From Schmidtea polychroa (taxonomy: Eukaryota), in contig CM097885.1 in the NCBI GenBank assembly GCA_044892525.1, forward strand, positions 212,102,001 to 212,166,000: a stretch of 64,000 nt of DNA. The letters are read 5' to 3'. The position numbers and the translations under genes are program-made. Of the stretch, positions 2,234 to 23,235 are shown in pieces. Position 1 is the first letter of the stretch. Every line of letters begins with the position of its first letter. The notes under the pieces were generated by a model. It made no database searches and was not told where the DNA came from. It saw only the letters and a list, made by a program, of their open reading frames with translations.

Positions 2234-2240
2234 TAATTTT

Positions 2241-2258: not shown

Positions 2259-2484
2259 CATCAATTTCAATTAATTAGCGAATGCAAATTGACTAATACT
2301 TCTCGAATCTTATTATAAAAGTACGGTTAGAAAATGACGAAATTAAAGATATAAATAAAGTAAATTTAAAATTGGGAAAATAAAATAAAAGTAAAACAAC
2401 TTATAACAATTCAAAAGGGAAATGTTTGCTGAAACCACCATGTATTAGTTGTATATTATTAAAATATTTTCTTTTCTAATAGAC

Positions 2485-3835: not shown

Positions 3836-5176
3836 AAAGGCCTAGAGAAACGAGAGATAGCATTTAAGCTACAATGAGATAGTATTTAAGTTAACAGTGG
3901 AATGGAATATTAAAGCTAGTTAAAACAAGTTGAATATTAATTACAAGAATTTGAATTGAGAGGAATAAACGAGCTCGTGAAAAATGATAACAAGATTATA
4001 ACGAGAAAAAGTAAGAGAAGAGGGAAATGAATTAAAGAGATAATGGTAAACAAAGAATAAGCGAAAAGAGATGATGAGTAGAAGAGGAAATAATCAACTA
4101 ATTAAAGGGATCCCAGTGAAGTAGAGAAACTCTACGGAATATTTAATTTTTTTTGTTTAAACCGGGGAAATTAATTTATTAGTTCTAGCACAGAACTGAG
4201 TGAGAAATAGTAAAGACGAAAAAATGAGTAACATAGCGACAATGGCGCCAAAGGATTAGGAAAATAAAGGGGGGTAATAAGCAGTGACCGACAACGACCT
4301 ATTCATATTATAAGTATTAAAGATAGATAATTATTACGACTCTATAGATAATTGTTACTACCCCATATAGATAATTTAAAATCGACGAAAAATACGGGCT
4401 GATGGGAGATTATAACCCGCGGAAGTAATTGCATAAAAAATAGGGGAAGCATAAACAGAACCTAAAAGGTGTCTGTGTTTGGATGTTGCAGAAAGAATGA
4501 TGAAGTCGTGTAAGCAGATGCAACACGAGATCATTTTTTCATTTTAGATATCAAACCAATCCAGTCAATCAAGCCAATCCAGAACCTGCACAAAGGGAAT
4601 TCGAAGAAACCACCAATCAACCCAAGATAACTGATTCAGAACCCGCACGGCAAGAATAATCCAACTCGAAGACGGAAGACGATACAGATAACGACCCATC
4701 CAACTTCAAACGAATCACCGATACATTCAGTCTCGTGGTATTAGCAGCCATCAGCCAAGGACTCATAAATCTCCTCAGAATATCATTAGCGGAATCACAC
4801 AGGATACTCTTCGAAGACAATCTAGTCAGAACCGAACTCGCCCAACTCAGCAGTCGCTAGCTACAAGAAATCCACAAGAAACGGCTGAGAAGCGTAGGAA
4901 AGAATCACGGATAAACCAAATCTTAGATCTTCAAGTAAGCCAGGAGACGTATTATTTTCAGGAGACGAATTACAACAACTCAAAAGAGGACGATCCATTA
5001 AACAACAAAGAGGAATATCACAAGGAGCACGAAGAACCAATCAAATACCCATATTTGACCAAGAAAATCTCGGGTACACCCCTAGTCGATCTCGAAGCAG
5101 AGAAAGTCTATCCGACATCACTAATAGTTTAGCAACGTCAACCGAAGAACTATCGGCCCAAAGTCTAGTCACATCA

Positions 5177-7177
5177 TTGGATAACTTAAAAGAAACAGAC
5201 GAAGCTAGAACACCAATCATGACAAATGTCGTAAAGATCGACGAATATAAAGAGAAGTTCAGAGGAGAACCGTTCAACGGGAATGCAAACAAGTTAGCAA
5301 CGTTCATAACCAATTTTGAAGTCTATATCGATGTGTGTGGATGGACGTCCGAAGCAATTAGTAAACGGATGCCGTTGTTTTTATGCGATAGCGCATTAGA
5401 AGTGTATTTAGAAGCTAAAGAAAGAAATACGAAGTTAGACAGTTGGGAAAGCATCAAAACATTCCTGAGGAAAACTTTCGGAGCCAGCAAACCAATAAAT
5501 CAAGCGCTAAGCGAACTAGCAAGTAGAAAACAAAGAGCAAACGAATCCATAACATTGTATGCGAGTGAATTGCGAAGATTGGCAAAGAAGGCCATGAACG
5601 GAAACTTGCCGGAGGAAAATTTAATTGGTTATTTCATAGAAGGACTGCGCCGAGAAGAGGTAAGGGCCTCGGTGGGATGTCAAATGTGTAAAACACTAGA
5701 GGAAGCCATAGATTGGGCCACGAGATGCGAACTACACCTCCCGGCACAAATGAATGTCATGCAGGAGGAGGGGAGAATCGCAGCCGCAACGATAAAAACG
5801 GAAAATGGAGATAACAACAATCACGAACCAAAGATGAATCAATTTATACCGGGTGCACATCAAATTTTCAAACCACCACAAGGACGATCAAACGGGAATA
5901 ACAGTGAACGCAACAACTCGAACAATGGGAATAATTTTAATAATCGACGAAATACGAACGATAACAAACAATGCCGAACATGCGGTAAACCAGGACATTG
6001 GGATAGAGATTGTTACCGAAACGCAAATTGCAATAGGTGTGGACGACGAGGACACACGGAAAATATATGTCAATTGAGAGGGTGTTTTAACTGTGGTCAA
6101 CCAGGTCACATCTCAAGAGACTGTCGAGCAAGGAGCCAACCACAACGACCACCACAGCGAAATAATCATTATGCACCAAATCCGCAACGACAAAGTAATC
6201 CTAGTGAGGGAAAGCAAATGAATGTGATGCAAGAGATTTCACAAATGAAGCAGATGATGCAACAAATGATGAGACCGAGACAAGAACAAGTACCACAACA
6301 AACCCAGAATATACGCATGATGAGGAGTACCGAGAATCTTAACAATTATGAAGTGCAACAACATGCACAAGAATGGCAGAGACTACAAGCTGAAGAAGAG
6401 AGAATAAAAAGAGAGCGAATTCAGCAGCGACAAGAACAACCATTGCGAATAAATATGATGAGAATGGTAAGGGAGATAAAAGAGCAATATTGTTACAATT
6501 ACGGTAAAAATCCAAGAGTTGTACCTATGAGCGAACCAGAGAAACCGAAAGAAACAATTATAGAAACCAAAAAGGAAAGCCCAACAACACCGCTAAAGGG
6601 AAATCAGAGAATTCAGAAAATATTTTGGAAAAAGATAAAAGATAAAATCGAAAGAGAAAATGAGAAAACAAAAACAGAAGCAGAAGCGATAAATGATGGA
6701 AACGAGAAACAAACTAGTCATTTAACCCATGAAATGGTACAAGAATTAAAATCGGAAGAATTAACGATATTTGAGAATAAAAAGCTCAAGAAAGTACCAA
6801 GAATGAGAAATTTACGAATTAACATGATGAGGACGACAAAGAAGGTGTTGTCAACAGATGACGATGAGGATTATGTGAGTAGCCTTGGTGGAGAAATGTT
6901 ACAGTTAAATGAAAATATCGACCAACTAAGGGAAAAGATCGGAGCAGATGAGGATGAAAGTGAAAGCGACGTGACAAGCGAAAGCGCAGACGAGAATATC
7001 GAAATGAAATTGAGAAAAGAAAGAGACGAAGCGATAAAACAAGTAAAAGAAATACTTCCAGTGGTGGTCAGAAACCAGGAATTCATTGACAGTATACCAT
7101 ACAGACGCTTCATACAAAAGATAATGAAACTAGAAAGAAACGAAATAGACCTAATACCAAACGAGAAAAAGCGATAA
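5177..7177 (+). CDS. gag: Gag (capsid domain, three CCHC zinc knuckles, long charged C-terminal extension)
   Basis: Retrotransposon-gag-like helices (SWESIKTFL..F, RKQRANESI..YA.ELRRLA, FIEGL). Knuckles CRTCGKPGHWDRDC, CNRCGRRGHTENIC, CFNCGQPGHISRDC. 5177 is TTG; first ATG is 5219; frame is open from 4898. Confidence 0.93.
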   Translation: MDNLKETDEARTPIMTNVVKIDEYKEKFRGEPFNGNANKLATFITNFEVYIDVCGWTSEAISKRMPLFLCDSALEVYLEAKERNTKLDSWESIKTFLRKTFGASKPINQALSELASRKQRANESITLYASELRRLAKKAMNGNLPEENLIGYFIEGLRREEVRASVGCQMCKTLEEAIDWATRCELHLPAQMNVMQEEGRIAAATIKTENGDNNNHEPKMNQFIPGAHQIFKPPQGRSNGNNSERNNSNNGNNFNNRRNTNDNKQCRTCGKPGHWDRDCYRNANCNRCGRRGHTENICQLRGCFNCGQPGHISRDCRARSQPQRPPQRNNHYAPNPQRQSNPSEGKQMNVMQEISQMKQMMQQMMRPRQEQVPQQTQNIRMMRSTENLNNYEVQQHAQEWQRLQAEEERIKRERIQQRQEQPLRINMMRMVREIKEQYCYNYGKNPRVVPMSEPEKPKETIIETKKESPTTPLKGNQRIQKIFWKKIKDKIERENEKTKTEAEAINDGNEKQTSHLTHEMVQELKSEELTIFENKKLKKVPRMRNLRINMMRTTKKVLSTDDDEDYVSSLGGEMLQLNENIDQLREKIGADEDESESDVTSESADENIEMKLRKERDEAIKQVKEILPVVVRNQEFIDSIPYRRFIQKIMKLERNEIDLIPNEKKR

Positions 7178-7188
7178 TAAAGAAGTAT

Positions 7189-10100
7189 ATGGAAAAAATG
7201 AAACAAGCAGAGACAACACGCTACGTAATAAAAATTGGAACGAGCAAAGGACTCGAGAGAATATGGATAAAAAACACCGTTACAGACGAGCTCTTTGACT
7301 GGATAAGAGAACATTTGGGCAGCTCGAGAAAGAAAGAATACCTGTATCAATATCAAGGAGAACAAATCAAACCCGACATGCACCTAATAGATGCACTGAT
7401 CTGGCCAGGAGAAACTCAAATATTGAAGTTGCATAAAGAGAAGCAACCAACAAATGTTCACGAATGGGCTAAAGACGCCAAGGCGGAATACGATTTTAAT
7501 ATCAAGCTGAAGTTGGAACAAATAAAACAATGCACCTTGCGACGAAATCTAGATAAATTAATCAAACAAATCCAAGAACAAGTCGAAGACAACTGGGATT
7601 TGCTCATAGCAAGACGAACTCCAGACATGCATGAACTAATGAGCCGACTGCGCGATACAGAATTGCTCCGAATGAGTGATTGGAGAACCATAAATTTGAT
7701 CCACAAATACGGAAGATTAAAAGAAACGCAACCACAGAAATTGGAAATAACCATATGGTTACCAAACGAGGAGAAACGGCGAATAAAAATGAGCAACCAG
7801 AGTACGGTGGACGATTTAGTATCAAAGATAAACCAAGAAATAACGGAAAAAGTTCGAAGCGAGAGCAGCGATGGTATGATAGATGATGTAGTCATGATGT
7901 ACGACAAAATAATACTACGGGCTGAAGACGATACCTCGTTAAGCGAAATGGGAATGTGGGATAATCATCAAATAATTAGAATATTGCCCATGGACGAATT
8001 CCGAACAAGAGATGTAACATACCAGAAAGAGATACGGGACAGGATGAAAACGCTATACCAAAAATCAGTAGAGATAATCGAAATTCATCAACAATGGCTA
8101 AAAGAAAAAGAACTACAAGGAAAAATAAGGAAACTAAGTGTTAGATCCTGCAGACGAACCCCATGGGAAAGGATGTGGAATGCGGAAAACAAAGAATGGG
8201 AAATTAGGAAAGGGATTTTCGTGGAAACAGACATTGGTGAGATAGAAAGTGAATCAGAAGAAGAGGAAGATGAACCTCCAAAATACGAAGAGGACGAAAT
8301 AGAATCGATATCGGACGACGAAAGCGAAACGGATGTCACGTCAGAAAGTGAAACGGAAATCAGGCATATTCGTGCAATGAGAAAGAAGGAACGCGAGTAC
8401 GCCGACATAGACGGTGAAGAGGCAAAAGAAGCGAGAGATCGAGAAGAAAGAGAAAGATACAAACAATTAAGCGACATCTTAGAGACGGGGACAAAGAATC
8501 AGAAAAGACAAACGATAGCACTAGCCAATTTCATCCTAAAAATATCGGACAATATCCAGTATCTGAGAGAGATAGTAAAAACTATAGAGGAATACCGGCG
8601 ATACAACGAATGGTACCCGGAACAATTGGAACAAATCATTGGGAAGTGGCGAAACCATGAATGGTCACAAGACACCCAAGAAAGATATCGAATTCGAATT
8701 AAATACCCGGATAAAACTGTAGAAGAAGTGGAAGTACATCCAACCACAAAAATCAGAGAATTAAAAAAGAAACTAGCATACGAAACCCCATTCCATCTAC
8801 AACTACAAGGAAAATCATTAGATGACAATGTGGATGTCGGAATAACACCCATGAGGTTAGGGGAGATCAATGTATTAACAATGGCAGAAACATTGGGAAA
8901 ACCAATTAAAAGGAAGAGCAAATCCAGTAAAACTACGAAAGGTAGCTTGAGTACACCAAGCCCTGACAAAGTGGCGAGTAAATCGAACGAAACTGAGGAA
9001 ATTGAGGAGATCATATTAGAAGACAGCGATGAGGGAGCTGGAGAAAGATCGCCGATATTAGTAAGATGGCCGACAGGGGCAGAGATTTGGACAACAAGCC
9101 AGCCATCAACTAGTTACCAGCAACCGAGTAAGTTGAGTATTGAGGAGATTATCGATAATACGACAGAAACCGAAACCGATGAACAATTCCAACGACAAAA
9201 GGGATCAATGAGAATAACACCTGAAGGGCAAACAGACAAAATAATAGACGAATGGAATGAGTGGCTGAGAAACAACGATAGCTCATTACCAAGAACAGAT
9301 AACGAAAGAAACCCGAGTTACGAAAGGACAAGAGAAGCTGGAACAATGATGGAGAAACGGGCAAAAGGGAGGCCCAAGAAGCAAGGAGAAAAACCAGAAT
9401 TTAAAACCAGAGAACAGTTGAAACAGGAACAAGGACAAGTCAGATTAGAGAAATTGGATAAAATAGTATGGGACCTAAAAGAAGCTCAACCAACAATCGA
9501 GAGAGGCGAAAAATGGATACGAGAGCTAGTAAAGGATATGTTAATAATAACGAGTCCGCAATTGAGACGATTATGGCAACGAAAAGTGGCAAGCGTAGAC
9601 GCCAGACAACTATGGAATGTAATATCCGGAATAATTCCGAAATTAATTAAAGAGAAGACAAAAACCACTAAAACCGATTGGGAAGAGACAAGAAGAGTAA
9701 TTGAGCAATTAACTCTAAACGCAAACGACGACGAACATCATTTAGTAGTATTAACGTATCTAATGTACAATTTGATGGGATTAGCAGCAAGAAAAATACC
9801 TAACAAACAATTTGCAAATCATGTAGAAATGACCGTTACAATCATTGAAAATACAATCGAACCACATATTATCCGTGCCGGAGGGTGGAAAAGACTCATA
9901 CAAGCGCCACGAAAAAACGAGCAAGAGAGATCAATGCAAATTCGGTTGAAAAAATTACTAAACGAGCTAGAATGGGAATTGCCATTAAAGGACCCAGCCA
10001 GCAGAAAGGCGTCGATTAATTCACTAATGATGACCATGATGATATGGATGCTCTGCACCAGCGGAGCAGCTGGATTCACAATCTACGACTGTGACAATTC

Positions 10101-13100
10101 GATAATGGGAGAAAAATACTCCCTAAGAGATATAGAGGAATGTAGACAGGCATCTCCGAATAAATTGGATATAGTAAAAAAGAAAGTCTCCTACCACGTA
10201 TACCAAGAATCAGATTTTATCCGAACACAAGCTAGAGAATGCGTAGTATCAAAGAAGGTGTTGGCGTATTACTGTGGACAATACTCATATTCAACCCTCA
10301 TATTACCTGGATTAGATAAAGAAATAGTACCTATACAACGAGAAGACTGTAAAGAGCTTTTTAGAACCGGAGCGATGAGAATCCGGGATGGAGTAACAAT
10401 ACACGGACAAAGCGGAATGATCAAGACGGAAAGTATCTACGTAGCCGGACGGGTAAAATCAACCGATGGATCATGCAACGGAGGTACATATACGATCCGA
10501 GGAGAGGTAATATCCGGAGTAGTAGTAATCGAGTCCTACACAGTGGAGTTGAAGGAATACGAAGCGCAATTCGACGCAAATAATTATCAAATGAAAACCA
10601 ACCCAGCATGCAGAGCTACGGAAAACGTGTGTAGAACGGGAATTTCGACTATAATATATGAAGCCAACACCCAAAAATGCCGACTCCAATTGTTAAAAAG
10701 TGCTCTATTCAATAAAGTAAAAGGAGAAATATACGAAAACGAAGATGACGATGAAGAGAATGGAAACGTAAGAATGCGAAATGGGAAACCAGTTCCACCA
10801 TCCCCCAAAGAAAAGAGACTCACAACACAAAAAACACCAACGGCATTAATTACAGATGATCCAGATATCGGTATGAGATTCATCAGAGAAAAAGAGACCA
10901 CCAAATGTGACAGTATAGTATACCGGACGAACTACGCAGGTATCTACATGTCAAGGCAAGTAATAGACCGAGCAGTGGGAAAGGTAGCAACGGAGGACGT
11001 AAAATTGTACTTGTATGCCAATAATAAGATGGACTTCTTATTCCATCGAGGACAAACAACAATGCAAAAAGTGTATTACGATCTTATACAAAATGACTGT
11101 TCATTGAATAAAGAGATACTAAAAACAAAATTAGCCATCGCAATAACACACCCAGATAACACAATGCCATCACTCCCGTTACCGGATGGACACTTTGGTA
11201 GAATGGTGGGAGAGGTAATGTATACATATGCATGTACCAAGACGTTTGCGCGACTACCAAGAAAACCCACAATTCCACCAGGGAAATGTGCAAACGAATT
11301 AGAAATTAGTTACAAAGGGCGGAACAGATTCGTTCAACCCGTCACTAGAATTATGAACCCAATTGGATTTTATCCGAACACCTTTAACTGTTCAAATGCA
11401 TACGGGCCATTTTATGAAAAACCCGATGGGAAATGGATAATGTTACCGTTAAAAGTCGAAGTGCAGGAACCTAAAAAGTTTGGATTAATAGAACTTGCAA
11501 CAGAACAGGATTTCAAACCAATTGATGTGTCAAAGGCGGGTATGTACTCACCAGAGGATTTAGAAACGGCACGATTAAACGTACTATTCCCAGCAAGGCG
11601 AGAGTCCATTTTATCAAATATGGTTACCATAACTGGTGGAACAAATTTTCAATCAAGTCCCAATTATGAACTATTATTATCACCGGATCATTTTCAACAA
11701 GCCACGTCAAACATGATGAAAGCAATGTGGGGAAGATTTCTAGTGTTCGGTCAAATGATGGCAGGAATATTGGGAATCATCTTAATTATTCAGATAGTCA
11801 GAGTAATATTGACCCAAATGTTGGCATGTTTCGATATATACAAACGAGAAAAGAAAGTAAATTGGAAGTTGATAGTAGGTTTTCTACCATTTTTGGCAAA
11901 AACAATGGTGTTGCACGGTCATTCTAAAGATATACACAGAATAAAACGATTAATCAAAATACTGACAAAAATAAAAGGGACAGACGAAGAAGTTGGCAGA
12001 CGATTCCGGAAAACAATGTATGATGAAGCAACGAGAGCGCAACTAAAAAAGAACAAACCAAAATTCTTCGACAGATTTAGGAATCGATCAAACAGCAGCG
12101 ATAGTGATGATGACGACAACGGGAATGACAAATATCCATATCCAAGTAGAAACCCGAATGAAAAACCAATAGAAACAGCGCCATATTGGGAGAAAGAAAA
12201 AACAAATACCTGGATAGCCAACGGAAGTTATATACCCCCAGATATTGTTGGACAACAAGCAGCTCTAACCATGACACAAAATATGTATCCACAGTTACCA
12301 AGTCAACCAGGAATGAATTATATGCCAACCCGAAGAACGAAAAGTGTAGATCAAGCAGACGACGTCAGAACAATAGCAGTAATGAGTTCACCTGGAGGCG
12401 CGGCAGTAACAGTCATGATCCAAATCAACGGGAAAGAGACAAGCGCAATGATAGATACCGGAGCAAATGTATCAGCAATAGCAATAAACCAAATACCCAG
12501 TAAATATTGGAAAGATATCGAACAAACAACTATCCATATTATTGCATGCAGTAAAGAAACCGTAGACGTAGTAGGAAGATGGTGGACTACGTTACGATAT
12601 CAAGATAATGAAATTGAAACGTATCTAGCGGTGATACCCAAACTGAGTGAACCATGTATAATCGGAACGGATTTAATGCCGGAGTTGTTCAAGGAAGTAG
12701 TAATTGATTTAACAACAATGTGTCTAAAAGACAAAATGGGTAGAATATGCAAGATGAACGCAATAATTAGATGCCCGGAGAAAATAATTGTACCAGCAAA
12801 ATCACAGATGATATGTCAAATAAAAGTGGATGCAGGAATGGAAGGAGAAGCCATTTTTGAGCCAAGCAAATCATTCGAAAAACGACGAGAATTACCATTA
12901 GCAAGAGAAATAATAACAATAAATGAAGAAGGGGAAATACCAATTAACATCACAAATTTCGAAGAGGAAGATAAAATCATATATGAAAATGAAAGATTGG
13001 GTAGATTGACACCCATGATAGACATCGAATTGCCAAAAATCACCAATGAATCAACGAAAGCTGAAGAATTATGGATAATTGATAGCACCTTGCTAACGGA

Positions 13101-16100
13101 AAAGGAGAAGGAAAGACTCCAACAACTATTGATAGAATATAAAGATATATTCGCAATTTCGGATTTGGATTTGGGAGCATGTGAGGTCACACTACACGCA
13201 ATACCATTAATAGACGAAACTCCAATTGCGTTACGACCATATAAACTAGCAGAGAAGCAAAAAGAGATAGCCGAAGCAGAAGTGCAAAAAATGCTAGATG
13301 CACAAGTGATCGAACCAAGTTGTTCGCCATGGCAATTTCCAGTAGTCATGGTGAAGAAAAAAGACGGTACTCAGAGATTCTGTATCGATTATCGGAAACT
13401 AAATGCAGTAACAAAAAGAGACACATACCCGTTACCAGACATCAATGAGATGTTACTTATGCTGCAGGGGGCCGCATATTTTACATCTTTAGATCTGAAA
13501 AGTGGATATTGGCAGATCAAAGTAAAGGAGGAAGACAAAGAGAAAACAGCATTCACATTGGGCCGAGATCTATACCAATTCAGGAAAATGCCGTTTGGAC
13601 TAACCAATGCCCCAGCATCATTTCAGAGATGTATGAATTTTGTCACACACGGGATCAAGCAGTGTATGGTATATATTGATGATTTATTAATATATTCAGC
13701 AACATATGAACAACATTTGGAAGATATCAGAAACGTGTTCATCCGATTACGACAATGGAAACTGAAACTTAAACCATCCAAATGTGATTGGGCAAAAGAA
13801 AAAGTTACGTTCTTAGGACACATAGTGTCAGCAAAAGGCAAAGAACCAGATCCAAGAAACATAGAAAAAATAAAAACATGTCCAGCACCAAAAACTGTCA
13901 CCCAAGTTCAAGAATTTCTCGGATTATGCGGATATTATCGTAAATTCATTAAAAACTATGCAGGTATTGCGAAACCAATCCAAGAGTTGGTGAAAAAAGA
14001 TATCTCATTTATTTGGGGAGCAGAACAGCAAAAAGCATTCGAAACACTACGAGACAAATTGATTGAAGCTCCAATACTAGTACATCCTGATTTCAAGAAA
14101 CCGTTCTTGTTAGCAACAGATGCCAGTGGATATGCAGCCGGAGCAATATTGGGACAACTCGACGAGGAAGGAAAAGAAAGAGTGATTGGATACTACAGCA
14201 GAACGTTTAAAAAGCATGAGAAAAACTATTCCGTAACTGAAAGAGAAGCGTTAGCAATAATACAAGCGATTAAGCACTTTCGATATTTGTTATGGGGACA
14301 CGAAATATGTATCACAACGGATCATCAACCATTAGTATGGCTCGGACAGCATAAAGAAGCTTCAAGTAGATTGATGCGATGGGCAATGCAGTTACAAGAA
14401 TATTCACCGTTCATAAAATCCAAAGCGGGAAGAGCAAATGCCAATGCAGATTGTATGTCCAGATTTATTTTTCCAGACTTAGTAGATCACGAAATGCAAC
14501 GAATATGTCTGATGGTAGCGGAAGATTTAGATTTTTGCCAATTACGGAAAGACCAACAAGAGGATGTAGAGTTGAAACAAATAATCGAGTATGTGAAAAC
14601 CGGGAAAGCAGAGGCATATGAGAAAGATCAAAAATTGAAAGAGCATATGGATAAACATCGACATCGATATATTATCGAGAAGGATTGGTTATTGATAATG
14701 GATGGGGAAAAGAGATTGATGTGCATCCCCGAGAATAGACGTAAAGATTTGCTAACGCAATACCATGACGGAAGACTCGGAGGACATATGTCATCTAAAA
14801 AGACGTTAGCACGGATGAAACAAAAATACTTCTGGCCTACGTTATCCGAAGACATAACGGAATGGGTGAAGAATTGTATAACTTGCGCAACCAGAAGAAA
14901 CACGGGAACAAAATGGAAGGCACCATTAAAGCCAATGCCAGTACCAGCAGAACCCATGACTATGATATCTATGGATGTAGTCGGTCCATTACCAGAATCA
15001 GATAGAGGGAATATTTACATATTGGTGATCACGGACTATCTGACTAAATTTCCCGAAGCATTCGCTATGGCAGACCAGAAAGCAAAAACAATCGCAAAAA
15101 TATTAGTAGAGGAAATATGTTGTCGATATGGAACGCCGAAACAAATACTGACCGATCAAGGAACAAATTTCATGAGTGAGATAATGAGCGAAGTAACCAA
15201 TTACTTCAAGATTGCAAAATTAAGAACATCACCGTACCACCCACAAACAAATGGTATGACAGAAAGATTCAACGGAACCTTGATCCAGATGTTATCAAAT
15301 TATGTCGATCGTCATCAACGAGACTGGGATGAATACATAAAATTATGTCTAATGGCTTACAGAATGTCGATTCACGCGTCCACAAAGATGAGTCCGTTCA
15401 AGTTGATGTACGGCAGAGAATGCAATATGCCAATGGATTTGGAGTATCAGCCACCAATATCACAATACATGGAAATAGACGATTACGTAACCAAGTTCAA
15501 GGAAAGAATGCAGGAAATCTGGGAAACTGCAGGATTGAATGTAAAATTTTATCAAGAAAGTTACAAAGATTTACATGATAGAAAGAAAAACGTCAAACCA
15601 CATACGTTTCAAACAGGCGATTGGGTGATGATCGAAACACCGGAATTGATTCCAGGAACCACCAAAAAATTGCAACGAAACGGCAAAGGACCGTATGAAA
15701 TTTTATTCGTCGGAGAAACTAATGTAAGAGTACGATTAGTGAACAACCCTTTTACAAGACCAATATACGTAAATGTTGCACGATGTAAGCCAATTCCGAA
15801 AACCGCCACCAGTCAGCCAGAAGGACGCACATTAACGACAAGATCACAAACGTATAGAATAAATATGTTACAGCAGATAAACGAACCAACAGGTAATCGA
15901 TTGGGGTTACAACCCTCAGAAGCCGAGAAAATCATAAAGGAAGTAAAAGCTAAAATGCCCGGATGGGCAAAAGACAGATTAGATTTTGAGATATTGGGAG
16001 GTCTGCTAACAATGATAGAAAACTATGCCAATCGAGAAAGAACACACCCATTACTCAGAGTGGTTAAAAGTCAATGGCCTATATTATTCACAATCACAGA

Positions 16101-18927
16101 TCACTACGGAGATACACCACTACACAAACTTTTAAAGGTTGGTAATAATGAACAAATACTAGAGACAATTGAAGAATTTCGCGACTGTAACATTTCGACA
16201 GATCAAGAAAACAACCAAGGTTACACTCCACTAATGATAGCAGCCAATCGGGATAAAGCTAAAGATATTATTATCGCATTACTTGAAACTGGGTCAAAGA
16301 TAACCACACAAGATCACCACCAGAAAAATGCACTACATCATGCAATCGAAGGGAAAAGTACGGAAGCCTTCATAATCTTAGTAGATCTATTATCGTACGA
16401 GGATAATAGGGAGATAGGAAACATGTATGACGGGCTATTAACCGCGATCAAAGAGAAATTAATAACAATTACTGGATTACTAATTGCATGGAGGAACCCG
16501 ATCAAAAACGATTATATGGTAGATATAAACGAAACATTTACCAAAGGGGAAAACACCTTGATGAGAGAAGCGATGAGAGGACATCACCTATTCGAAATTC
16601 CCAATCAACTACTACAACGTGGCATAAAGTTTTCAAATCACAAAGACGAACAACTAATCAGAAAACGGATTACCAACTTCGAAAAAACTATATCTCAATT
16701 TACCGATAAAGTACAAGTAAAATATTGGGAAACCGTGAGTGTATTATCTATGATGGAAACTATGAATAACATTCGAGAAAACTACCTAAGTATTATTCAA
16801 GTTCTAACGGCAGAGGAACGCATTAACAGTTCGAACAAGAAAAAGATAAAAATGAAGAAAGTAAAAGCAAGAGAGTCTGAGGAACAAGTCGATCAAATAA
16901 TAACCGATATAGCAACAACAAGTAAACCAAAGATAATAAACTCAGACCAAGAGATAATACTACGCAAAGCCAAAGAGGTGTTCTTTGAAGAAATGCGAGA
17001 TTTATCTGACGAAGCAATACTATCAAAAATAATAAAAACAGTACACACCTACGCAAGAGATCAGACCACAAATCTAGACATAGGAAAAATAAAAACATTC
17101 ATACCACTAGCATTCACCTTACCAACGAAAGATTCAAGAACACCATTACAACAAGCAATATTAGCAGCAAAAGAAAACAGAGCAATAACCATCATAAGAA
17201 TTCTTAGAGATTTCGGAGAAGAATCAAATGCAAAAAATGAACAAGGAGAAACAGCAATGATGTATGCAGCAATAACAAATATACACCCGAAAACCTTACA
17301 TATACTACACCAATCAGGTTCGAGACTTGACGAGAAATCAAACGAGGGAAATTCTGCCATGGATTGGGCAACAATACAACCAAACTTGGAGATGATTAGA
17401 TTCATTTGTAAAAATGCTACAAGAACTGAGGTAGAAAATATCTGTAAAAACACGTCACAGTTCCAATGGAATACGATACGGAAAAGCTTAGAAGCCATGA
17501 AGTTATTGTTAACCTGGAAAATACCACAAAGCAATAAATATGCAATAAATATAAATGAGTTCTACGAAAACGGAGAAAATGCTATGGTTAAGAATACGTT
17601 GACAAAAGGAGGAACTCCGAAAATCATAATGATCGTATTGAACAGAGAAGACCTCAAATTCACGCAAAATCAAAACGAACAAAAGCGAATCGGAAAACAT
17701 CGTCGAATACAATTAAGGGAATTGGTAAAAGAATGGAATAGAAAAAGACATGCAGCAACAGGAAGAAAAGAGTTTGAATTCGAAGCAAAATTAGCAAGAA
17801 ATAGAGTGCTAACAGCATATCGCAGATTGTTGAACGATATAAATGTCGAGGACGACATTTTAAACGACAGCGGGAGAGATAAAGACGACGATAATGATGA
17901 AACAGGTCAAAACGGGAATGGAGAGAAAGAGAAATCAAAGGAGAATAATCAAGGGAATAACGACTCAAGTATAAAAAAGGAGGAAAATAAACCGGGAAAC
18001 CGAACAAAGGAAGAGGAAAAGACGAATAATGGGAAACAGAGGGTATGCCTACTTTTTACCAACAAGGAAATGGAGACAAATATGATGATAATGATACTCA
18101 TACTAACAATGGTAGAAATGATAACAGCCCACGGTGGAATGAGAACGATAAAAGAAGCCAAAGAAACGGAAAATAAAGACAACAAAGAGGAAGAACTAAA
18201 ACAAGAAAAGAAAAAGCAAGTACAAGAACAACAATGGGATTTGAAGGAGGAATGGAATCTAAAAGAAAGGTGCATACTAGGAAGATGTGTGTCGAGAGCA
18301 TATCAGAGACTAGTGTTAATAAACGAAGATACAGAACCGATAACGGAAGTAAGAATACAAGAAGCATACCGAAATCGAGACGGAAGGAGAATAACGAAAG
18401 TCAAAGGGAAGGAGGTACACCTGGAAAAAGGAGGTGAGGTAGTGATAACGCAACTCCAGCCAAGAAAAGAACACAAAGTCTGCATTTCAAGATTAGGACC
18501 GGGTGAAGACTGTCTACAATATGTAACACAGCAACAACCTCCAAAAGAATACACAGTATGCATCTGGAGAAAAGATACAGCGAGAGAATGTCGACGATAC
18601 CCTGGGAAAAGAGGGAAGAAAAGAAAAAGCAACGATGAGAAAGAGGAGGAAGAAAAGCGCAAGAAAACTAGTGAGAAATATCAAGATAATTACGTGTCAG
18701 AAGAAGAAATGGAAAAAATACAAAAAATGGCAAAGGAAGGGATCAATGAGGAAATAACGAAAATACGGGGATTGGAGAAAGGAAAAAGCCAAACAGAGAA
18801 AGATGCAGAAACAGCAAGTACAATAACAGGCAATGGAAACTCAGAGACCATCAGTGTAAAGCAGATGATATGGATCAGCGGAATAATAATAATCGGAGCG
18901 TTCATAACTATAACGGGGGGACGATAA
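7189..18927 (+). CDS. pol: 3912-aa polyprotein: Ubl x3 - Bcl-2-like - Env-like glycoprotein - PR - RT - RNase H - IN - ankyrin x2 - C-terminal membrane protein
   Basis: Uninterrupted ORF. Motifs IDTGA (PR), YIDD (RT), TDASG/EREALA/TDHQPL (RH), HHCC + DVVGP/TDQG/ERFN + GPY (IN). Confidence 0.96.
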   Translation: MEKMKQAETTRYVIKIGTSKGLERIWIKNTVTDELFDWIREHLGSSRKKEYLYQYQGEQIKPDMHLIDALIWPGETQILKLHKEKQPTNVHEWAKDAKAEYDFNIKLKLEQIKQCTLRRNLDKLIKQIQEQVEDNWDLLIARRTPDMHELMSRLRDTELLRMSDWRTINLIHKYGRLKETQPQKLEITIWLPNEEKRRIKMSNQSTVDDLVSKINQEITEKVRSESSDGMIDDVVMMYDKIILRAEDDTSLSEMGMWDNHQIIRILPMDEFRTRDVTYQKEIRDRMKTLYQKSVEIIEIHQQWLKEKELQGKIRKLSVRSCRRTPWERMWNAENKEWEIRKGIFVETDIGEIESESEEEEDEPPKYEEDEIESISDDESETDVTSESETEIRHIRAMRKKEREYADIDGEEAKEARDREERERYKQLSDILETGTKNQKRQTIALANFILKISDNIQYLREIVKTIEEYRRYNEWYPEQLEQIIGKWRNHEWSQDTQERYRIRIKYPDKTVEEVEVHPTTKIRELKKKLAYETPFHLQLQGKSLDDNVDVGITPMRLGEINVLTMAETLGKPIKRKSKSSKTTKGSLSTPSPDKVASKSNETEEIEEIILEDSDEGAGERSPILVRWPTGAEIWTTSQPSTSYQQPSKLSIEEIIDNTTETETDEQFQRQKGSMRITPEGQTDKIIDEWNEWLRNNDSSLPRTDNERNPSYERTREAGTMMEKRAKGRPKKQGEKPEFKTREQLKQEQGQVRLEKLDKIVWDLKEAQPTIERGEKWIRELVKDMLIITSPQLRRLWQRKVASVDARQLWNVISGIIPKLIKEKTKTTKTDWEETRRVIEQLTLNANDDEHHLVVLTYLMYNLMGLAARKIPNKQFANHVEMTVTIIENTIEPHIIRAGGWKRLIQAPRKNEQERSMQIRLKKLLNELEWELPLKDPASRKASINSLMMTMMIWMLCTSGAAGFTIYDCDNSIMGEKYSLRDIEECRQASPNKLDIVKKKVSYHVYQESDFIRTQARECVVSKKVLAYYCGQYSYSTLILPGLDKEIVPIQREDCKELFRTGAMRIRDGVTIHGQSGMIKTESIYVAGRVKSTDGSCNGGTYTIRGEVISGVVVIESYTVELKEYEAQFDANNYQMKTNPACRATENVCRTGISTIIYEANTQKCRLQLLKSALFNKVKGEIYENEDDDEENGNVRMRNGKPVPPSPKEKRLTTQKTPTALITDDPDIGMRFIREKETTKCDSIVYRTNYAGIYMSRQVIDRAVGKVATEDVKLYLYANNKMDFLFHRGQTTMQKVYYDLIQNDCSLNKEILKTKLAIAITHPDNTMPSLPLPDGHFGRMVGEVMYTYACTKTFARLPRKPTIPPGKCANELEISYKGRNRFVQPVTRIMNPIGFYPNTFNCSNAYGPFYEKPDGKWIMLPLKVEVQEPKKFGLIELATEQDFKPIDVSKAGMYSPEDLETARLNVLFPARRESILSNMVTITGGTNFQSSPNYELLLSPDHFQQATSNMMKAMWGRFLVFGQMMAGILGIILIIQIVRVILTQMLACFDIYKREKKVNWKLIVGFLPFLAKTMVLHGHSKDIHRIKRLIKILTKIKGTDEEVGRRFRKTMYDEATRAQLKKNKPKFFDRFRNRSNSSDSDDDDNGNDKYPYPSRNPNEKPIETAPYWEKEKTNTWIANGSYIPPDIVGQQAALTMTQNMYPQLPSQPGMNYMPTRRTKSVDQADDVRTIAVMSSPGGAAVTVMIQINGKETSAMIDTGANVSAIAINQIPSKYWKDIEQTTIHIIACSKETVDVVGRWWTTLRYQDNEIETYLAVIPKLSEPCIIGTDLMPELFKEVVIDLTTMCLKDKMGRICKMNAIIRCPEKIIVPAKSQMICQIKVDAGMEGEAIFEPSKSFEKRRELPLAREIITINEEGEIPINITNFEEEDKIIYENERLGRLTPMIDIELPKITNESTKAEELWIIDSTLLTEKEKERLQQLLIEYKDIFAISDLDLGACEVTLHAIPLIDETPIALRPYKLAEKQKEIAEAEVQKMLDAQVIEPSCSPWQFPVVMVKKKDGTQRFCIDYRKLNAVTKRDTYPLPDINEMLLMLQGAAYFTSLDLKSGYWQIKVKEEDKEKTAFTLGRDLYQFRKMPFGLTNAPASFQRCMNFVTHGIKQCMVYIDDLLIYSATYEQHLEDIRNVFIRLRQWKLKLKPSKCDWAKEKVTFLGHIVSAKGKEPDPRNIEKIKTCPAPKTVTQVQEFLGLCGYYRKFIKNYAGIAKPIQELVKKDISFIWGAEQQKAFETLRDKLIEAPILVHPDFKKPFLLATDASGYAAGAILGQLDEEGKERVIGYYSRTFKKHEKNYSVTEREALAIIQAIKHFRYLLWGHEICITTDHQPLVWLGQHKEASSRLMRWAMQLQEYSPFIKSKAGRANANADCMSRFIFPDLVDHEMQRICLMVAEDLDFCQLRKDQQEDVELKQIIEYVKTGKAEAYEKDQKLKEHMDKHRHRYIIEKDWLLIMDGEKRLMCIPENRRKDLLTQYHDGRLGGHMSSKKTLARMKQKYFWPTLSEDITEWVKNCITCATRRNTGTKWKAPLKPMPVPAEPMTMISMDVVGPLPESDRGNIYILVITDYLTKFPEAFAMADQKAKTIAKILVEEICCRYGTPKQILTDQGTNFMSEIMSEVTNYFKIAKLRTSPYHPQTNGMTERFNGTLIQMLSNYVDRHQRDWDEYIKLCLMAYRMSIHASTKMSPFKLMYGRECNMPMDLEYQPPISQYMEIDDYVTKFKERMQEIWETAGLNVKFYQESYKDLHDRKKNVKPHTFQTGDWVMIETPELIPGTTKKLQRNGKGPYEILFVGETNVRVRLVNNPFTRPIYVNVARCKPIPKTATSQPEGRTLTTRSQTYRINMLQQINEPTGNRLGLQPSEAEKIIKEVKAKMPGWAKDRLDFEILGGLLTMIENYANRERTHPLLRVVKSQWPILFTITDHYGDTPLHKLLKVGNNEQILETIEEFRDCNISTDQENNQGYTPLMIAANRDKAKDIIIALLETGSKITTQDHHQKNALHHAIEGKSTEAFIILVDLLSYEDNREIGNMYDGLLTAIKEKLITITGLLIAWRNPIKNDYMVDINETFTKGENTLMREAMRGHHLFEIPNQLLQRGIKFSNHKDEQLIRKRITNFEKTISQFTDKVQVKYWETVSVLSMMETMNNIRENYLSIIQVLTAEERINSSNKKKIKMKKVKARESEEQVDQIITDIATTSKPKIINSDQEIILRKAKEVFFEEMRDLSDEAILSKIIKTVHTYARDQTTNLDIGKIKTFIPLAFTLPTKDSRTPLQQAILAAKENRAITIIRILRDFGEESNAKNEQGETAMMYAAITNIHPKTLHILHQSGSRLDEKSNEGNSAMDWATIQPNLEMIRFICKNATRTEVENICKNTSQFQWNTIRKSLEAMKLLLTWKIPQSNKYAININEFYENGENAMVKNTLTKGGTPKIIMIVLNREDLKFTQNQNEQKRIGKHRRIQLRELVKEWNRKRHAATGRKEFEFEAKLARNRVLTAYRRLLNDINVEDDILNDSGRDKDDDNDETGQNGNGEKEKSKENNQGNNDSSIKKEENKPGNRTKEEEKTNNGKQRVCLLFTNKEMETNMMIMILILTMVEMITAHGGMRTIKEAKETENKDNKEEELKQEKKKQVQEQQWDLKEEWNLKERCILGRCVSRAYQRLVLINEDTEPITEVRIQEAYRNRDGRRITKVKGKEVHLEKGGEVVITQLQPRKEHKVCISRLGPGEDCLQYVTQQQPPKEYTVCIWRKDTARECRRYPGKRGKKRKSNDEKEEEEKRKKTSEKYQDNYVSEEEMEKIQKMAKEGINEEITKIRGLEKGKSQTEKDAETASTITGNGNSETISVKQMIWISGIIIIGAFITITGGR
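7219..8880 (+). other. Three ubiquitin-like (beta-grasp) domains in the polyprotein N-terminus (about 7219-7434, 7741-7986, 8686-8880)
   Basis: IRIKYPDKTVEEVEVHPTTKIRELKKKL..FHLQLQGKSLDDN and LEITIWLPNEEKRRIKMSNQSTVDDLVSKI..EDDTSLSEMGM follow the ubiquitin pattern. The first copy is weaker. Confidence 0.65.
9460..9905 (+). other. Divergent Bcl-2-like domain in the polyprotein
   Basis: BH2-like IEPHIIRAGGWKRL versus Bcl-xL LEPWIQENGGWDTF. Upstream VIEQL..DEHHLVVL aligns to VVNELF..NWGRIVAF with a one-residue gap. Degenerate BH3-like QLRRL. Confidence 0.6.
10021..11916 (+). other. env: Envelope-like class III (chuvirus/gB-type) glycoprotein with signal peptide and C-terminal TM region
   Basis: Signal LMMTMMIWMLCTSGAAG, then FTIYDC..YSLRDIEEC..Q.S..C.V..YYCGQYSYS..C, the N-terminal pattern of chuvirus-type G proteins. 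TM WGRFLVFGQMMAGILGIILIIQIVRVIL at about 11728-11820. Confidence 0.8.
12406..12690 (+). other. Aspartic protease domain
   Basis: VMIQINGKETSAMIDTGANVS (catalytic D at 12454) and CIIGTDLM. Confidence 0.93.
13200..14460 (+). other. Reverse transcriptase and RNase H domains
   Basis: SPWQFPVVMVKKKDG, CIDYRKLN, DLKSGYWQI, MPFGLTNAPASFQR, YIDD (13672), TDASG, NADCMSR. Confidence 0.97.
14740..15790 (+). other. Integrase domain (HHCC, DDE core, GPY/F)
   Basis: YHDGRLGGH..CITC, MDVVGPLP, LTDQGTNF, PQTNGMTERFN, KGPYEI. Confidence 0.96.
15860..17850 (+). other. Tandemly duplicated ankyrin-repeat module after integrase
   Basis: GDTPLH, GYTPLMIAA, KNALHHAI, GENTLM in copy A. SRTPLQQAI, GETAMMYAA, GNSAMDWA, GENAMV in copy B. 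The A and B flanks align to each other. Confidence 0.88.
18070..18927 (+). other. C-terminal polyprotein segment: signal-like hydrophobic stretch, Cys-paired domain, terminal TM anchor
   Basis: MMIMILILTMVEMITAHG; repeated CISRLGPGEDC / CIWRKDTAREC; terminal MIWISGIIIIGAFITITGGR*. Confidence 0.55.
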
Positions 18928-19239
18928 AAATAATCCGAGATAAACAACAGCGTAACAAACTCGAAATGATCAGAGCCAGAAATTTTCAACATCGAGTAAA
19001 AAGGCCCAGTAACATGAGCCAAGAACAGTGGATGGAGGCCTGGAATACGCAGTGCCCTCCAAATCCACAAATATAGAAAGGGTCATGACTGTATATAATT
19101 GTAAAAAGTAAGTATATCTTATGTATATAACAGTATCATATTTTTATATAAGCGCGGTATTACTAGTATATAACGATCGGGAGAAATAAACAATATAAAT
19201 TTAAATAAGACAAAGATTGAGAATATATAAAAATTAGGA

Positions 19240-19599: not shown

Positions 19600-19684
19600 A
19601 CCAAACCTAAATTAAAATGTAAATAACTGTAAATAAAATCTCGAGCCTGTTTCGATAAGAACTATATGTATATATAATTATAGA

Positions 19685-23196: not shown

Positions 23197-23235
23197 AAGC
23201 AATTAAAGCCAGTGTAAATAATATAATAATAATAG

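What the first reader, a model, noticed from the sequence alone, without database searches (positions are those of the whole stretch)
7189..15790. Giant retroelement with a class III fusion glycoprotein embedded in Pol, upstream of the protease
Seen: one stop-free 3912-aa ORF in which a signal peptide, a Cys-patterned ectodomain and a TM region (10021-11916) precede PR-RT-RH-IN. Known: env genes of retroviruses and errantiviruses normally lie 3' of integrase as a separate ORF, and chuvirus/gB-type glycoproteins have been captured by some invertebrate LTR elements. Inference: this is a ~29.5-kb, possibly infectious, complex retrovirus-like element. Its replication enzymes would be made on the ER as the cytoplasmic tail of the fusogen, which fixes Env:Pol at 1:1 and offers a direct way to recruit Pol to budding membranes. 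Size recalls planarian Burro elements, but I do not know of this domain order being described.
Basis: partly seen in the sequence, partly recalled or inferred. Interest (0 to 1): 0.95.

Follow-up and report, generated by a model that had tools for sequence, protein, structure and literature searches.

The report
Burro-type giant retroelement, in-frame Env

Summary
ORF 7189..18927 is stop-free (3912 aa) and lies between LTRs that are 99.87% identical. It reads ubiquitin-like module, signal-like segment, ectodomain, one TM, PR, RT, RNase H, IN, ankyrin repeats. The ectodomain matches Pfam PF24664 (E 1.8e-71). A confident AlphaFold model (pLDDT 85) matches herpesvirus gB in the PDB (E ~1e-13) and chuvirus glycoproteins in BFVD (E ~1e-43), so the class III call is confirmed. 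The order is a lineage trait: of 16 long, divergent Env-bearing proteins, 9 continue from Env into RT in one ORF, 5 have Gag upstream in frame, and none has Env after IN. Env keeps 14 cysteines and diverges in step with RT. Arkhipova and Yushenova (2019) described env in frame between gag and pol in planarian Burro elements. Chary and Hayashi (2026) reported GAG-ENV-POL with gB-type Env in Platyhelminthes, Nematoda and Bryozoa. The proposed mechanism, with Pol made as the cytosolic tail of a membrane-anchored Env after an internal signal sequence, fits the conserved topology but is untested. In this copy gag is a separate ORF, so a 1:1 ratio would apply to Env:Pol only.

The parts
1..2233 (+). 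5' LTR, 3' part only (cut by the window start); ends in ...CA
   Evidence: Matches 25718..27951 at 99.87% with no gaps; sequence read.
2241..2259 (+). Primer-binding site (begins TGG, complementary to a tRNA 3' end), 7 nt after the LTR
   Evidence: Read directly. No matching tRNA gene in the window.
2449..2970 (+). 5' accessory ORF with a RING finger (173 aa)
   Evidence: PF13920 zf-C3HC4_3, E 3.9e-11.
3520..3837 (+). 40-nt tandem repeat array (about 6-8 copies) in the long leader
   Evidence: Tandem Repeats Finder. Tandem repeats are drawn in the published Burro maps.
5177..7177 (+). gag ORF (666 aa): capsid-like domain plus two CCHC zinc knuckles
   Evidence: PF03732 E 3.2e-11 and PF00098 E 1.2e-10. 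Aligns to the N-terminus of relative P0003, where gag is fused in frame (E 2e-17).
7189..18927 (+). ORF2, 3912 aa, uninterrupted: accessory modules, Env, PR, RT, RH, IN, ankyrin repeats, C-terminal region. The frame is open from 7090, overlapping the end of gag in the -1 frame.
8689..8913 (+). Ubiquitin/SUMO-like module (aa ~501-575), below Pfam threshold
   Evidence: PF11976 E 0.007 and PF00240 E 0.014-0.034. The same module in P0003 scores E 4e-5. It matches the published Burro layout.
9736..9888 (+). Possible Bcl-2-like module (aa ~850-900), ending about 45 aa before the signal segment; inconclusive
   Evidence: PF00452 E 0.12, 13 bits against a cut-off of 31. An equivalent weak hit occurs in P0003 (E 0.05). 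The AlphaFold single-sequence model is unusable (pLDDT 49). A profile against PDB sequences gave 0 hits.
10018..10071 (+). Internal signal-peptide-like segment (aa ~944-961)
   Evidence: Hydropathy and sequence. A hydrophobic segment sits at the same place, directly before the conserved start of the ectodomain, in all 5 polyprotein relatives.
10072..11754 (+). Env ectodomain, class III fusion glycoprotein of the chuvirus/gB type (aa 962-1522), 14 Cys, 1 N-glycosylation sequon
   Evidence: PF24664 E 1.8e-71 to 2.4e-73. AlphaFold pLDDT 85.2. Foldseek: herpesvirus gB E ~1e-13 and chuvirus G E ~1e-43. 14 invariant Cys.
11755..11811 (+). Single transmembrane anchor (aa 1523-1541)
   Evidence: Kyte-Doolittle 2.53 over 19 aa; conserved in all relatives.
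11824..12393 (+). Charged linker of about 190 aa between the TM and PR (predicted cytosolic tail)
   Evidence: 34 K+R and 23 D+E, with no hydrophobic span. Barely alignable with relatives.
12412..12687 (+). Aspartic protease (DTG active site)
   Evidence: PF00077 E 4e-9; DTG at aa 1756.
13351..13827 (+). Reverse transcriptase (YIDD)
   Evidence: PF00078 E 1.5e-36; motif found.
14014..14403 (+). RNase H
   Evidence: PF17917 E 4.9e-39 and PF17919 E 9e-37.
14725..15297 (+). Integrase (HHCC zinc domain plus catalytic core)
   Evidence: PF17921 E 1.1e-19 and PF00665 E 1.7e-12; motifs found.
16183..17418 (+). Ankyrin repeat region (aa 2999-3410)
   Evidence: PF12796 E 1e-17 to 3e-19, with several repeats.
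18865..18921 (+). Hydrophobic segment at the extreme C-terminus of ORF2 (aa 3893-3911)
   Evidence: Kyte-Doolittle 1.99. Relatives P0001, P0003 and P0004 also have a hydrophobic peak near their C-termini.
19685..20668 (+). 3' accessory ORF with a RING finger (327 aa)
   Evidence: PF00097 E 8.7e-5.
21266..23847 (+). Three further 3' ORFs (351, 234 and 203 aa) with no family assignment
   Evidence: only sub-threshold coiled-coil-type hits.
25718..27950 (+). 3' LTR, the part verifiable against the 5' copy. The true start may be 24137 (TGTTGG, the inverse of the CCAACA end).

Best explanation
**What it is (shown).** This is a full-length, recently integrated copy of a Burro-type giant Ty3/gypsy (Metaviridae-like) LTR retroelement with the GAG-ENV-POL layout. 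Its 3912-aa ORF2 carries a chuvirus-type class III fusion glycoprotein. That protein has its own signal-like segment and a single TM anchor, and it lies in frame between accessory modules on the gag side and PR-RT-RH-IN-ankyrin. The arrangement is inherited. It is shared by many divergent relatives, and Env has co-diverged with RT.

**How it most likely works (inferred, about 45% as a whole).**
1. ORF2 is translated as one chain.
2. The internal signal segment targets the nascent chain to the ER. The ectodomain is translocated and folds with disulfides.
3. Signal peptidase cuts after the signal segment and frees the upstream modules.
4. The single TM stops transfer, so the linker, PR, RT, RH, IN and ankyrin part is made in the cytosol, tethered to the membrane as the Env tail.
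5. The element's protease then releases the enzymes.

This is the topology logic of flavivirus, pestivirus and alphavirus polyproteins, applied here to a reverse-transcribing element. It fixes Env:Pol at 1:1. How ribosomes reach ORF2 from gag in this copy is unresolved.
For: **Anatomy**
- LTR pair at 99.87% identity, PBS, gag, and an intact ORF2 with all catalytic motifs.

**Env class**
- PF24664, E 1.8e-71.
- AlphaFold model with pLDDT 85.2 and pTM 0.63.
- All top 50 PDB matches are herpesvirus gB: probability 1.00, E down to 1.5e-13, about 650 aligned columns.
- The best BFVD matches are chuvirus-related glycoproteins, E 1e-43 to 1e-33, followed by rhabdovirus G and gB.
- A bona fide chuvirus glycoprotein (P0088) aligns end to end.

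**Conserved architecture**
- Five relatives at 38-41% Env identity carry PF24664 with PR, and four of them also RT, RH and IN, in one protein.
- Among 16 long representatives from different 50% clusters, 9 run from Env into RT in one ORF, 5 have Gag upstream in frame, and none has Env after IN.

**Constraint**
- 14 Cys are invariant among the six aligned polyproteins, and nearly every longer relative also has 14.
- Env identity of 27-41% over its full length exceeds Gag and PR, and it tracks RT divergence.

**Topology**
- The signal-like segment and a single TM are conserved in all six polyproteins.
- Two relatives have no Met in the signal region, which argues against a dedicated env start codon there.

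**Literature**
- Same layout in Burro, PMC6431247, and in Platyhelminthes elements, PMC13524379.
Against: - Nothing here shows translation, ER targeting or cleavage. SignalP and DeepTMHMM were not available, so topology rests on hydropathy alone.
- A signal sequence 944 aa into a chain (more if gag is read through) is unusual for a retroelement.
- One relative (L003) has Env and PR-RT-RH-IN in two adjacent ORFs in different frames, and three ORFs end after PR. Whether these reflect decay, sequencing error or real variants is unknown.
- There is no canonical -1 slippery heptamer and no significant RNA structure at the gag/ORF2 junction.
- Burro membership could not be checked against reference sequences. 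The MATH_TRAF_C, BIR and dUTPase motifs reported for Burro1 were not detected.
- The host was not identified by name.
Confidence: 0.8

Rival explanations
1. Env and Pol are not made as one chain in vivo. As in retroviruses and Drosophila errantiviruses, splicing either produces a subgenomic env message that starts at the Met cluster in the signal segment, or removes the Env segment from the gag-pol message. On this view the shared frame is tolerated but not used.
For: - This copy has five Met codons within the signal segment.
- ORF2 has its own ATG 11 nt after the gag stop, and no canonical frameshift signal was found, so non-standard expression routes are needed in any case.
- Spliced env mRNAs are the rule in retroviruses (established knowledge).
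Against: - No stop separates the Env tail from PR in 9 divergent lineages. Keeping thousands of codons in one frame without selection is unlikely.
- Two relatives have no Met in the signal region.
- A subgenomic message starting there would still read through into Pol in this copy.
Confidence: 0.25
2. The Env module is a relic or has been repurposed, for example as a receptor-blocking or host-interaction domain. It no longer serves membrane fusion, and the element spreads only within cells, like an ordinary LTR retrotransposon.
For: - Most LTR retrotransposons need no Env.
- Burro-type elements reach thousands of copies by germline or stem-cell transposition.
- No fusion activity has been shown for any member.
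- The ectodomain has only 1 N-glycosylation sequon.
Against: - The full-length ectodomain, the signal segment, the TM and the 14-Cys scaffold are conserved across lineages whose Gag and PR have diverged further.
- The predicted fold is a complete gB-like architecture at high confidence.
- Sparse sequons are shared with standalone viral relatives.
Confidence: 0.12
3. The juxtaposition is specific to this locus: a recent capture of a chuvirus G gene by one gypsy copy, or an assembly chimera.
For: Chuvirus glycoprotein genes are often found endogenised and next to retrotransposons in arthropods (PMC7642597, PMC10084718). One related metagenome contig (L002) is itself chimeric at its far end.
Against: - The whole unit lies between a matched LTR pair.
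- The same order occurs in many independent contigs and samples.
- Env divergence tracks RT divergence.
- There is no composition break across the Env borders.
Confidence: 0.03

Closest known systems
Burro elements (Burro1-4; GYPSM1 in Repbase) of the planarian Schmidtea mediterranea, and Burro-like elements of other dugesiid planarians (Grohme 2018 as cited in PMC6431247; Arkhipova and Yushenova 2019)
   Same: - Giant gypsy-like LTR element with an internal region of about 23-25 kb.
- Gag with a capsid domain and CCHC knuckles.
- Ubi2/SUMO-like module, then a BCL2-like module, then env in frame ahead of PR-RT-RH-IN.
- Ankyrin repeats, RING-type accessory modules, tandem repeats and extra accessory ORFs.
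- The host flank is 27-30% GC, matching the >70% A/T reported for S. mediterranea.
   Different: - Gag here is a separate 666-aa ORF, not part of a single 4873-aa ORF1.
- MATH_TRAF_C, BIR and dUTPase were not detected.
- The Ubl and Bcl-2 hits are below threshold.
- No reference sequence was available for a direct identity test.
GAG-ENV-POL 'errantiviruses' with HSV/gB-type Env in Platyhelminthes, Nematoda and Bryozoa (Chary and Hayashi, eLife 2026, PMC13524379), and the non-canonical nematode ERVs of Sacco et al. 2022 as cited there
   Same: - Ty3/gypsy Pol, a class III (gB-type) Env, and Env placed between gag and pol.
- LTRs and a tRNA PBS.
- An ectodomain flanked by a signal peptide and a TM.
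- A conserved cysteine-bridge scaffold.
   Different: That survey treats ENV and POL as neighbouring ORFs (gaps of up to 2 kb were allowed). In the text searched, it does not mention a fused reading frame, giant size or accessory modules. I could not see which flatworm species it used, because its supplements are not held.
Glycoproteins of Jingchuvirales (chuviruses), and their endogenous copies associated with BEL/Pao and gypsy elements in mosquitoes (Dezordi 2020, PMC7642597)
   Same: Same protein family (PF24664) with the same predicted fold and cysteine count. P0088, the glycoprotein of odonatan chu-related virus 136, aligns over its full length.
   Different: Only 22-27% identical. The viral and arthropod copies are standalone proteins of 620-720 aa whose signal peptide is at the true N-terminus. 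They are not embedded in a polyprotein.
Drosophila gypsy/ZAM-type errantiviruses
   Same: A Ty3/gypsy backbone that has acquired a viral fusion protein and is considered potentially infectious.
   Different: Env there is a class I, baculovirus-F-type protein encoded 3' of IN as a separate ORF and expressed from a spliced mRNA (established knowledge). Here Env is class III, lies 5' of PR, and is in frame.
Polyproteins of flaviviruses, pestiviruses and alphaviruses (a working analogy only, not homology)
   Same: Internal signal and stop-transfer segments place the glycoprotein parts in the ER lumen and the enzymes in the cytosol. Signal peptidase and a viral protease share the processing (established knowledge).
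   Different: Those are RNA viruses with class II fusion proteins and no reverse transcription. No processing data exist for the element studied here.
Atlas virus of the hookworm Ancylostoma ceylanicum (PMC9094657)
   Same: An intact retrovirus-like endogenous element of a worm whose Env was taken from a negative-strand RNA virus (abstract seen).
   Different: A belpaovirus-type backbone and a phlebovirus Gn-Gc (class II) Env. I did not read its ORF layout here.

Membership tests
Burro-type giant gypsy elements of planarians | Giant size: internal region up to about 25 kb, total around or above 30 kb with LTRs | tested here: met
   The internal region 2234..25717 is about 23.5 kb. At least 27.95 kb lies within the window, and the total is about 29.5 kb if the LTR starts at 24137.
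Burro-type giant gypsy elements of planarians | N-terminal Gag with a retrotrans_gag motif and 2-3 CCHC knuckles | tested here: met
   PF03732 and two PF00098 hits in ORF 5177..7177. Here gag is a separate ORF, not fused.
Burro-type giant gypsy elements of planarians | env homology in frame between the BCL2-like motif and PR | tested here: met
   PF24664 at aa ~962-1552 of ORF2, and PR at aa 1742, in the same frame.
Burro-type giant gypsy elements of planarians | Ubi2/SUMO-like (PF11976) and BCL2-like motifs upstream of env | tested here: inconclusive
   PF11976 E 0.007, PF00240 E 0.014 and PF00452 E 0.12 are all below the cut-offs, but they lie in the published order and recur in relative P0003. 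The fold and profile tests failed.
Burro-type giant gypsy elements of planarians | Ankyrin repeats and RING-type accessory modules | tested here: met
   Ankyrin repeats at aa 2999-3410. RING ORFs at 2449..2970 and 19685..20668.
Burro-type giant gypsy elements of planarians | MATH_TRAF_C, BIR and dUTPase motifs (reported for Burro1/GYPSM1) | tested here: not met
   Pfam reported no such family at the E <= 0.01 to 1 reporting thresholds, in ORF2 or in the accessory ORFs. The literature says these modules vary between Burro relatives.
Burro-type giant gypsy elements of planarians | Sequence identity to the Burro1-4 or GYPSM1 reference sequences; host is a dugesiid planarian | not testable with these tools
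   No reference sequence or host name could be obtained. The flank GC of 0.27-0.30 is consistent with a planarian.
Class III viral fusion glycoproteins (gB, rhabdovirus G, gp64, chuvirus G) | The characteristic multidomain fold with a long central helix | tested here: met
   AlphaFold pLDDT 85.2 with a helix at residues 329-376 of the model. In Foldseek all top-50 PDB hits are gB, probability 1.00, E 1.5e-13 to 5e-11, TM-score 0.33-0.42 against post-fusion forms. BFVD chuvirus G: E 1e-43, TM-score up to 0.64.
Class III viral fusion glycoproteins (gB, rhabdovirus G, gp64, chuvirus G) | Family-level sequence membership (PF24664 Monjiviricetes_fusion) | tested here: met
   241-248 bits against a gathering score of 27. 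There are 1022 homologues at E <= 1e-3.
Class III viral fusion glycoproteins (gB, rhabdovirus G, gp64, chuvirus G) | Type I topology: signal peptide, ectodomain with a conserved disulfide scaffold, single C-terminal TM | tested here: met
   Hydropathy and conservation; 14 Cys. No dedicated signal-peptide predictor was available.
Class III viral fusion glycoproteins (gB, rhabdovirus G, gp64, chuvirus G) | Trimer formation, hydrophobic fusion loops and membrane-fusion activity | not tested
   Only a monomer model was made, and no activity data exist.
GAG-ENV-POL errantivirus-like elements (Chary and Hayashi 2026) | Ty3/gypsy POL (PR-RT-RH-IN order), gB-type ENV, ORF order GAG-ENV-POL, flanking LTRs and a tRNA PBS | tested here: met
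   definition taken.
GAG-ENV-POL errantivirus-like elements (Chary and Hayashi 2026) | Multiple intact copies (>98% identical) in the same genome | not testable with these tools
   Only one copy lies in the window, and the host genome is not in the searchable protein sets.

The most novel reading that the evidence does not exclude
The conserved fused frame is used as such. A reverse-transcribing element makes its replication enzymes as the cytosolic tail of an ER-inserted class III fusogen, through an internal signal sequence and signal-peptidase cleavage. That would be a flavivirus-like polyprotein topology in a retroelement. As a by-product, the cleaved signal segment would stay on the upstream (possibly Bcl-2-like) module as a C-terminal membrane anchor, mimicking a tail-anchored apoptosis regulator. 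In the papers I searched, the layout is described but this processing scheme is neither tested nor mentioned.
Probability: 0.4. Interest if true: 0.7.

Novelty: already known. Interest (0 to 1): 0.3.

Why it matters
The layout matters because it breaks the usual retroviral rule that env lies 3' of pol and is expressed from its own message. It shows that a fusogen taken from a negative-strand RNA virus can be built into a Gag-Pol polyprotein and kept there over long evolutionary times. That point has already been made for Burro (2019) and for flatworm, nematode and bryozoan elements (2022 to 2026), so this window adds a clean, young, fully open example but no new kind of element.

What remains open is how such a chain is targeted, cut and assembled. 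In the papers I could search, nobody has addressed this. The conserved internal signal segment, the single TM and the charged linker documented here make that question concrete. It can be addressed with transcript and proteome data that may already exist for planarians.

Tried and rejected
**Searches and tests that led nowhere**
- Sequence search of the Env piece against PDB chains: only noise, E >= 0.43. The fold comparison was needed.
- Word-indexed search with the Env piece alone: one fragment only. The exhaustive representative search gave the family instead.
- Exact look-up of ORF2 in public assemblies: not on record.
- Bcl-2-like module:
  - The single-sequence AlphaFold model had pLDDT 49, so I did not send it to a fold search.
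  - phmmer against PDB sequences gave noise.
  - A four-sequence profile against PDB sequences gave 0 hits.
  - The assignment stays inconclusive.
- gag/ORF2 junction: 0 canonical slippery heptamers, and the downstream RNA folds no better than shuffles (z -0.68). No expression mechanism could be assigned.
- tRNA and Rfam scans of the window: nothing.
- Papers not held: the Schmidtea genome paper, under the PMC id I tried, Sacco 2022 and the eLife supplements.

**Ideas considered and rejected**
- Class I/F-type Env, suggested by the 2019 HHpred link to gypsy Env. I rejected it because every strong structural match is class III.
- An unglycosylated ectodomain as an anomaly. My first windowed count of zero sequons was an undercount. 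There is 1 sequon, and relatives have 1-4.
- Late-domain-like motifs (one PPxY, two YPxL). These are about what chance would give, by my rough composition-based estimate, so I did not use them.

**Handling of consensus lines**
- The alignment tools printed consensus lines by themselves. I did not use them.

Full report
**1. The observation**

The window holds one very long open reading frame, 7189..18927 on the + strand, of 3912 aa with no stop. No ORF in any other frame over the same stretch exceeds 177 aa. The unit is bounded by long terminal repeats: 1..2234 matches 25718..27951 with 3 mismatches and no gaps, 99.87% identity. The LTR ends in CA, and a tRNA-type primer-binding site follows 7 nt later at 2241-2259. 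The left LTR is cut by the window edge, so the verified length is 27.95 kb. A TGTTGG at 24137 mirrors the CCAACA end of the LTR. A single 6-mer match is weak evidence.

**2. Anatomy**

Upstream of the giant ORF lie these features:
- a RING-finger ORF at 2449..2970;
- a 40-nt tandem array at 3520-3837;
- gag at 5177..7177, with a capsid-like domain and two CCHC knuckles.

ORF2 contains the following, in order:
- a sub-threshold ubiquitin/SUMO-like module at aa ~501-575, and a sub-threshold Bcl-2-like match at aa 850-900;
- a signal-peptide-like segment at aa ~944-961;
- an ectodomain with 14 cysteines;
- one strong TM at aa 1523-1541;
- a charged linker of about 190 aa;
- PR (DTG), RT (YIDD), RNase H and IN (HHCC, D, D);
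- ankyrin repeats at aa 2999-3410;
- an unassigned C-terminal region of about 500 aa that ends in a hydrophobic segment.

Downstream are a second RING ORF and three unassigned ORFs. Neither gag nor ORF2 contains a stop or a frame change. The two are in different frames, with an 88-nt overlap.

**3. What the embedded protein is**

- Pfam PF24664 (Monjiviricetes fusion glycoprotein) matches at E 1.8e-71, 241 bits against a cut-off of 27.
- An exhaustive search found 1022 homologues. The closest two dozen are fragments or lie inside long polyproteins. The rest are standalone proteins of 620-720 aa at 22-27% identity.
- The standalone set includes the glycoprotein of odonatan chu-related virus 136 and genomic copies in a beetle.
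- No solved structure is detectable by sequence.
- An AlphaFold model built on 72 family members is confident: pLDDT 85.2, pTM 0.63.
- That model matches herpesvirus gB in all top 50 PDB hits, with probability 1.00, E down to 1.5e-13 and about 650 aligned columns.
- In BFVD it matches chuvirus-related glycoproteins best (E 1e-43 to 1e-33, TM-score up to 0.64), followed by rhabdovirus G, nyavirus G and gB.

The 2019 suggestion of a link to the class I gypsy Env is not borne out.

**4. Is the fused order accidental?**

No.
- Five relatives at 38-41% Env identity carry PF24664 together with PR, and four of them also RT, RH and IN, in single proteins of 2296-4057 aa.
- Explicit domain mapping gives Env, PR, RT, RH, IN in P0001. 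In P0003 it gives CCHC, ubiquitin-like, Env, ankyrin, PR, RT, RH, IN.
- Among 16 long Env-bearing representatives from different 50%-identity clusters, 9 continue from Env into RT in the same ORF, 3 end after PR, 5 have Gag upstream in frame, and none has Env after IN.
- In one relative the Env part and the PR-RT-RH-IN part lie in two adjacent ORFs in different frames, a single frame change.
- Env is conserved over its whole length at 27-41%. That is more than Gag (23-26%) or PR (20-28%) and less than RT (48-64%). Env is most diverged where RT is most diverged, which fits long co-inheritance.
- Fourteen cysteines are invariant among the six aligned polyproteins, and nearly every longer relative also has 14.
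- All six aligned polyproteins have a hydrophobic signal-like segment directly before the conserved start of the ectodomain, and a single conserved TM. The signal segment is conserved in character but not in sequence, and two relatives have no Met there.

**5. How it probably works**

Shown: the parts, their order, their conservation and the fold. Inferred: everything about expression.

The simplest reading is a single chain. Its internal signal segment engages the ER. The ectodomain is translocated and becomes disulfide-bonded. The single TM stops transfer, so that PR-RT-RH-IN-ankyrin is made in the cytosol as a membrane-tethered tail. Signal peptidase and the element's protease then cut the chain. 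Flaviviruses, pestiviruses and alphaviruses handle mixed glycoprotein and enzyme polyproteins in this way (established knowledge). I put this at about 45%.

The main rival is splicing that separates Env and Pol expression (about 25%). It is not excluded, because the gag/ORF2 junction shows no canonical slippery site and no structure, and because this copy has a Met cluster in the signal segment. Conservation of the frame across nine lineages argues against it.

Gag is separate here and in relative L002 but fused in five other lineages.

**6. Comparison with what is known**

- Arkhipova and Yushenova 2019 (PMC6431247) describe the planarian Burro/GYPSM1 elements. They are gypsy-like, have internal regions up to 25 kb, and encode a 4873-aa polyprotein. 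That polyprotein has Gag and CCHC knuckles, MATH_TRAF_C, a Ubi2/SUMO-like motif, BCL2, an env region between BCL2 and PR, dUTPase, ankyrin repeats, BIR and RING. The env region has hits to arthropod and fish mononegavirus fusion glycoproteins. [quoted passage not shown]
- Chary and Hayashi 2026 (PMC13524379) report that elements of Platyhelminthes, Nematoda and Bryozoa carry only HSV/gB-type Env arranged GAG-ENV-POL. They cite Sacco 2022 for the nematode case.
- BURRO1 is described as highly abundant, active, enriched in the intestine and PIWI-controlled (PMC8532177).
- The element here matches the Burro layout in order and in most modules. Its host flank (GC 0.27-0.30) fits the >70% A/T reported for S. 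mediterranea.
- It differs in three ways: gag is a separate ORF, MATH, BIR and dUTPase are not detected, and the Ubl and Bcl-2 matches are below threshold.
- I could not compare it with reference Burro sequences or name the host.

**7. Verdict**

This is a known kind of element and very probably a Burro-family copy, at most an unnamed subfamily. The open question is the processing mechanism, which descriptive transcript and proteome data could address.

No repaired, consensus or joined-frame sequence was built. Frames were always queried separately, and the consensus lines printed by the alignment tools were not used.

Noticed in passing
window 46726-51041 (- strand): A second, ordinary-sized gypsy-like element lies on the minus strand: an RT-RH-IN ORF of 834 aa, a PR-like ORF and a DUF7041 gag-like ORF. 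It is only 30% identical to the giant element across RT-IN, so it belongs to a different family.
   Followed up: partly
window 29824-31781 (+) and 61673-62209 (-): Host gene pieces. Two WDHD1/AND-1-like exons (WD40 and Mcl1_mid) begin 1.9 kb downstream of the 3' LTR, and there is an MMACHC exon.
   Followed up: partly
window 52671-53111 (+): A fragment of a hAT transposase C-terminal dimerisation domain, E 3.3e-10.
   Followed up: no
window 921-1664 and 26638-27381 (+): Each LTR copy contains the same 247-aa ORF with no Pfam match. The LTR lacks the strong A-richness of the coding parts. Whether this ORF is a gene is unknown.
   Followed up: no
window 4001-24000: The coding strand of the element is strongly A-rich (AT skew 0.26-0.45), while the flanks are near zero. 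This compositional signature recalls A-rich retroviral genomes.
   Followed up: no
window 32000-34000: A very AT-rich stretch (GC 0.14) with families of 148-179-nt direct repeats around an N run at 33162-33334.
   Followed up: no
window 18865-18921; relatives P0001, P0003, P0004: ORF2 ends in a hydrophobic 19-mer at its extreme C-terminus. Three relatives also have a strong hydrophobic peak 50-110 aa from their C-termini. This may be a second membrane anchor at the far end of the polyprotein.
   Followed up: no
relatives P0002, P0001, P0008: Extra protease-like domains occur in relatives. P0002 has three in tandem after Env. P0001 and P0008 each have a second one after IN. None was detected after IN in this element.
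   Followed up: no
L002 16500-24948: The metagenome contig carrying relative P0005 is chimeric. GC jumps from 0.36 to 0.70 at about 17 kb, and the far end carries bacterial-type genes such as luciferase-like monooxygenase and MnhB.
   Followed up: yes
window 7189-10020 (ORF2 aa 1-944): Besides the Ubl at aa ~501-575, there are weak ubiquitin-fold hits at aa ~178-224 (PI3K_rbd, UN_NPL4). A short match to the end of P0003's Ubl lies at aa ~56-79. There may therefore be several ubiquitin-like modules.
   Followed up: no
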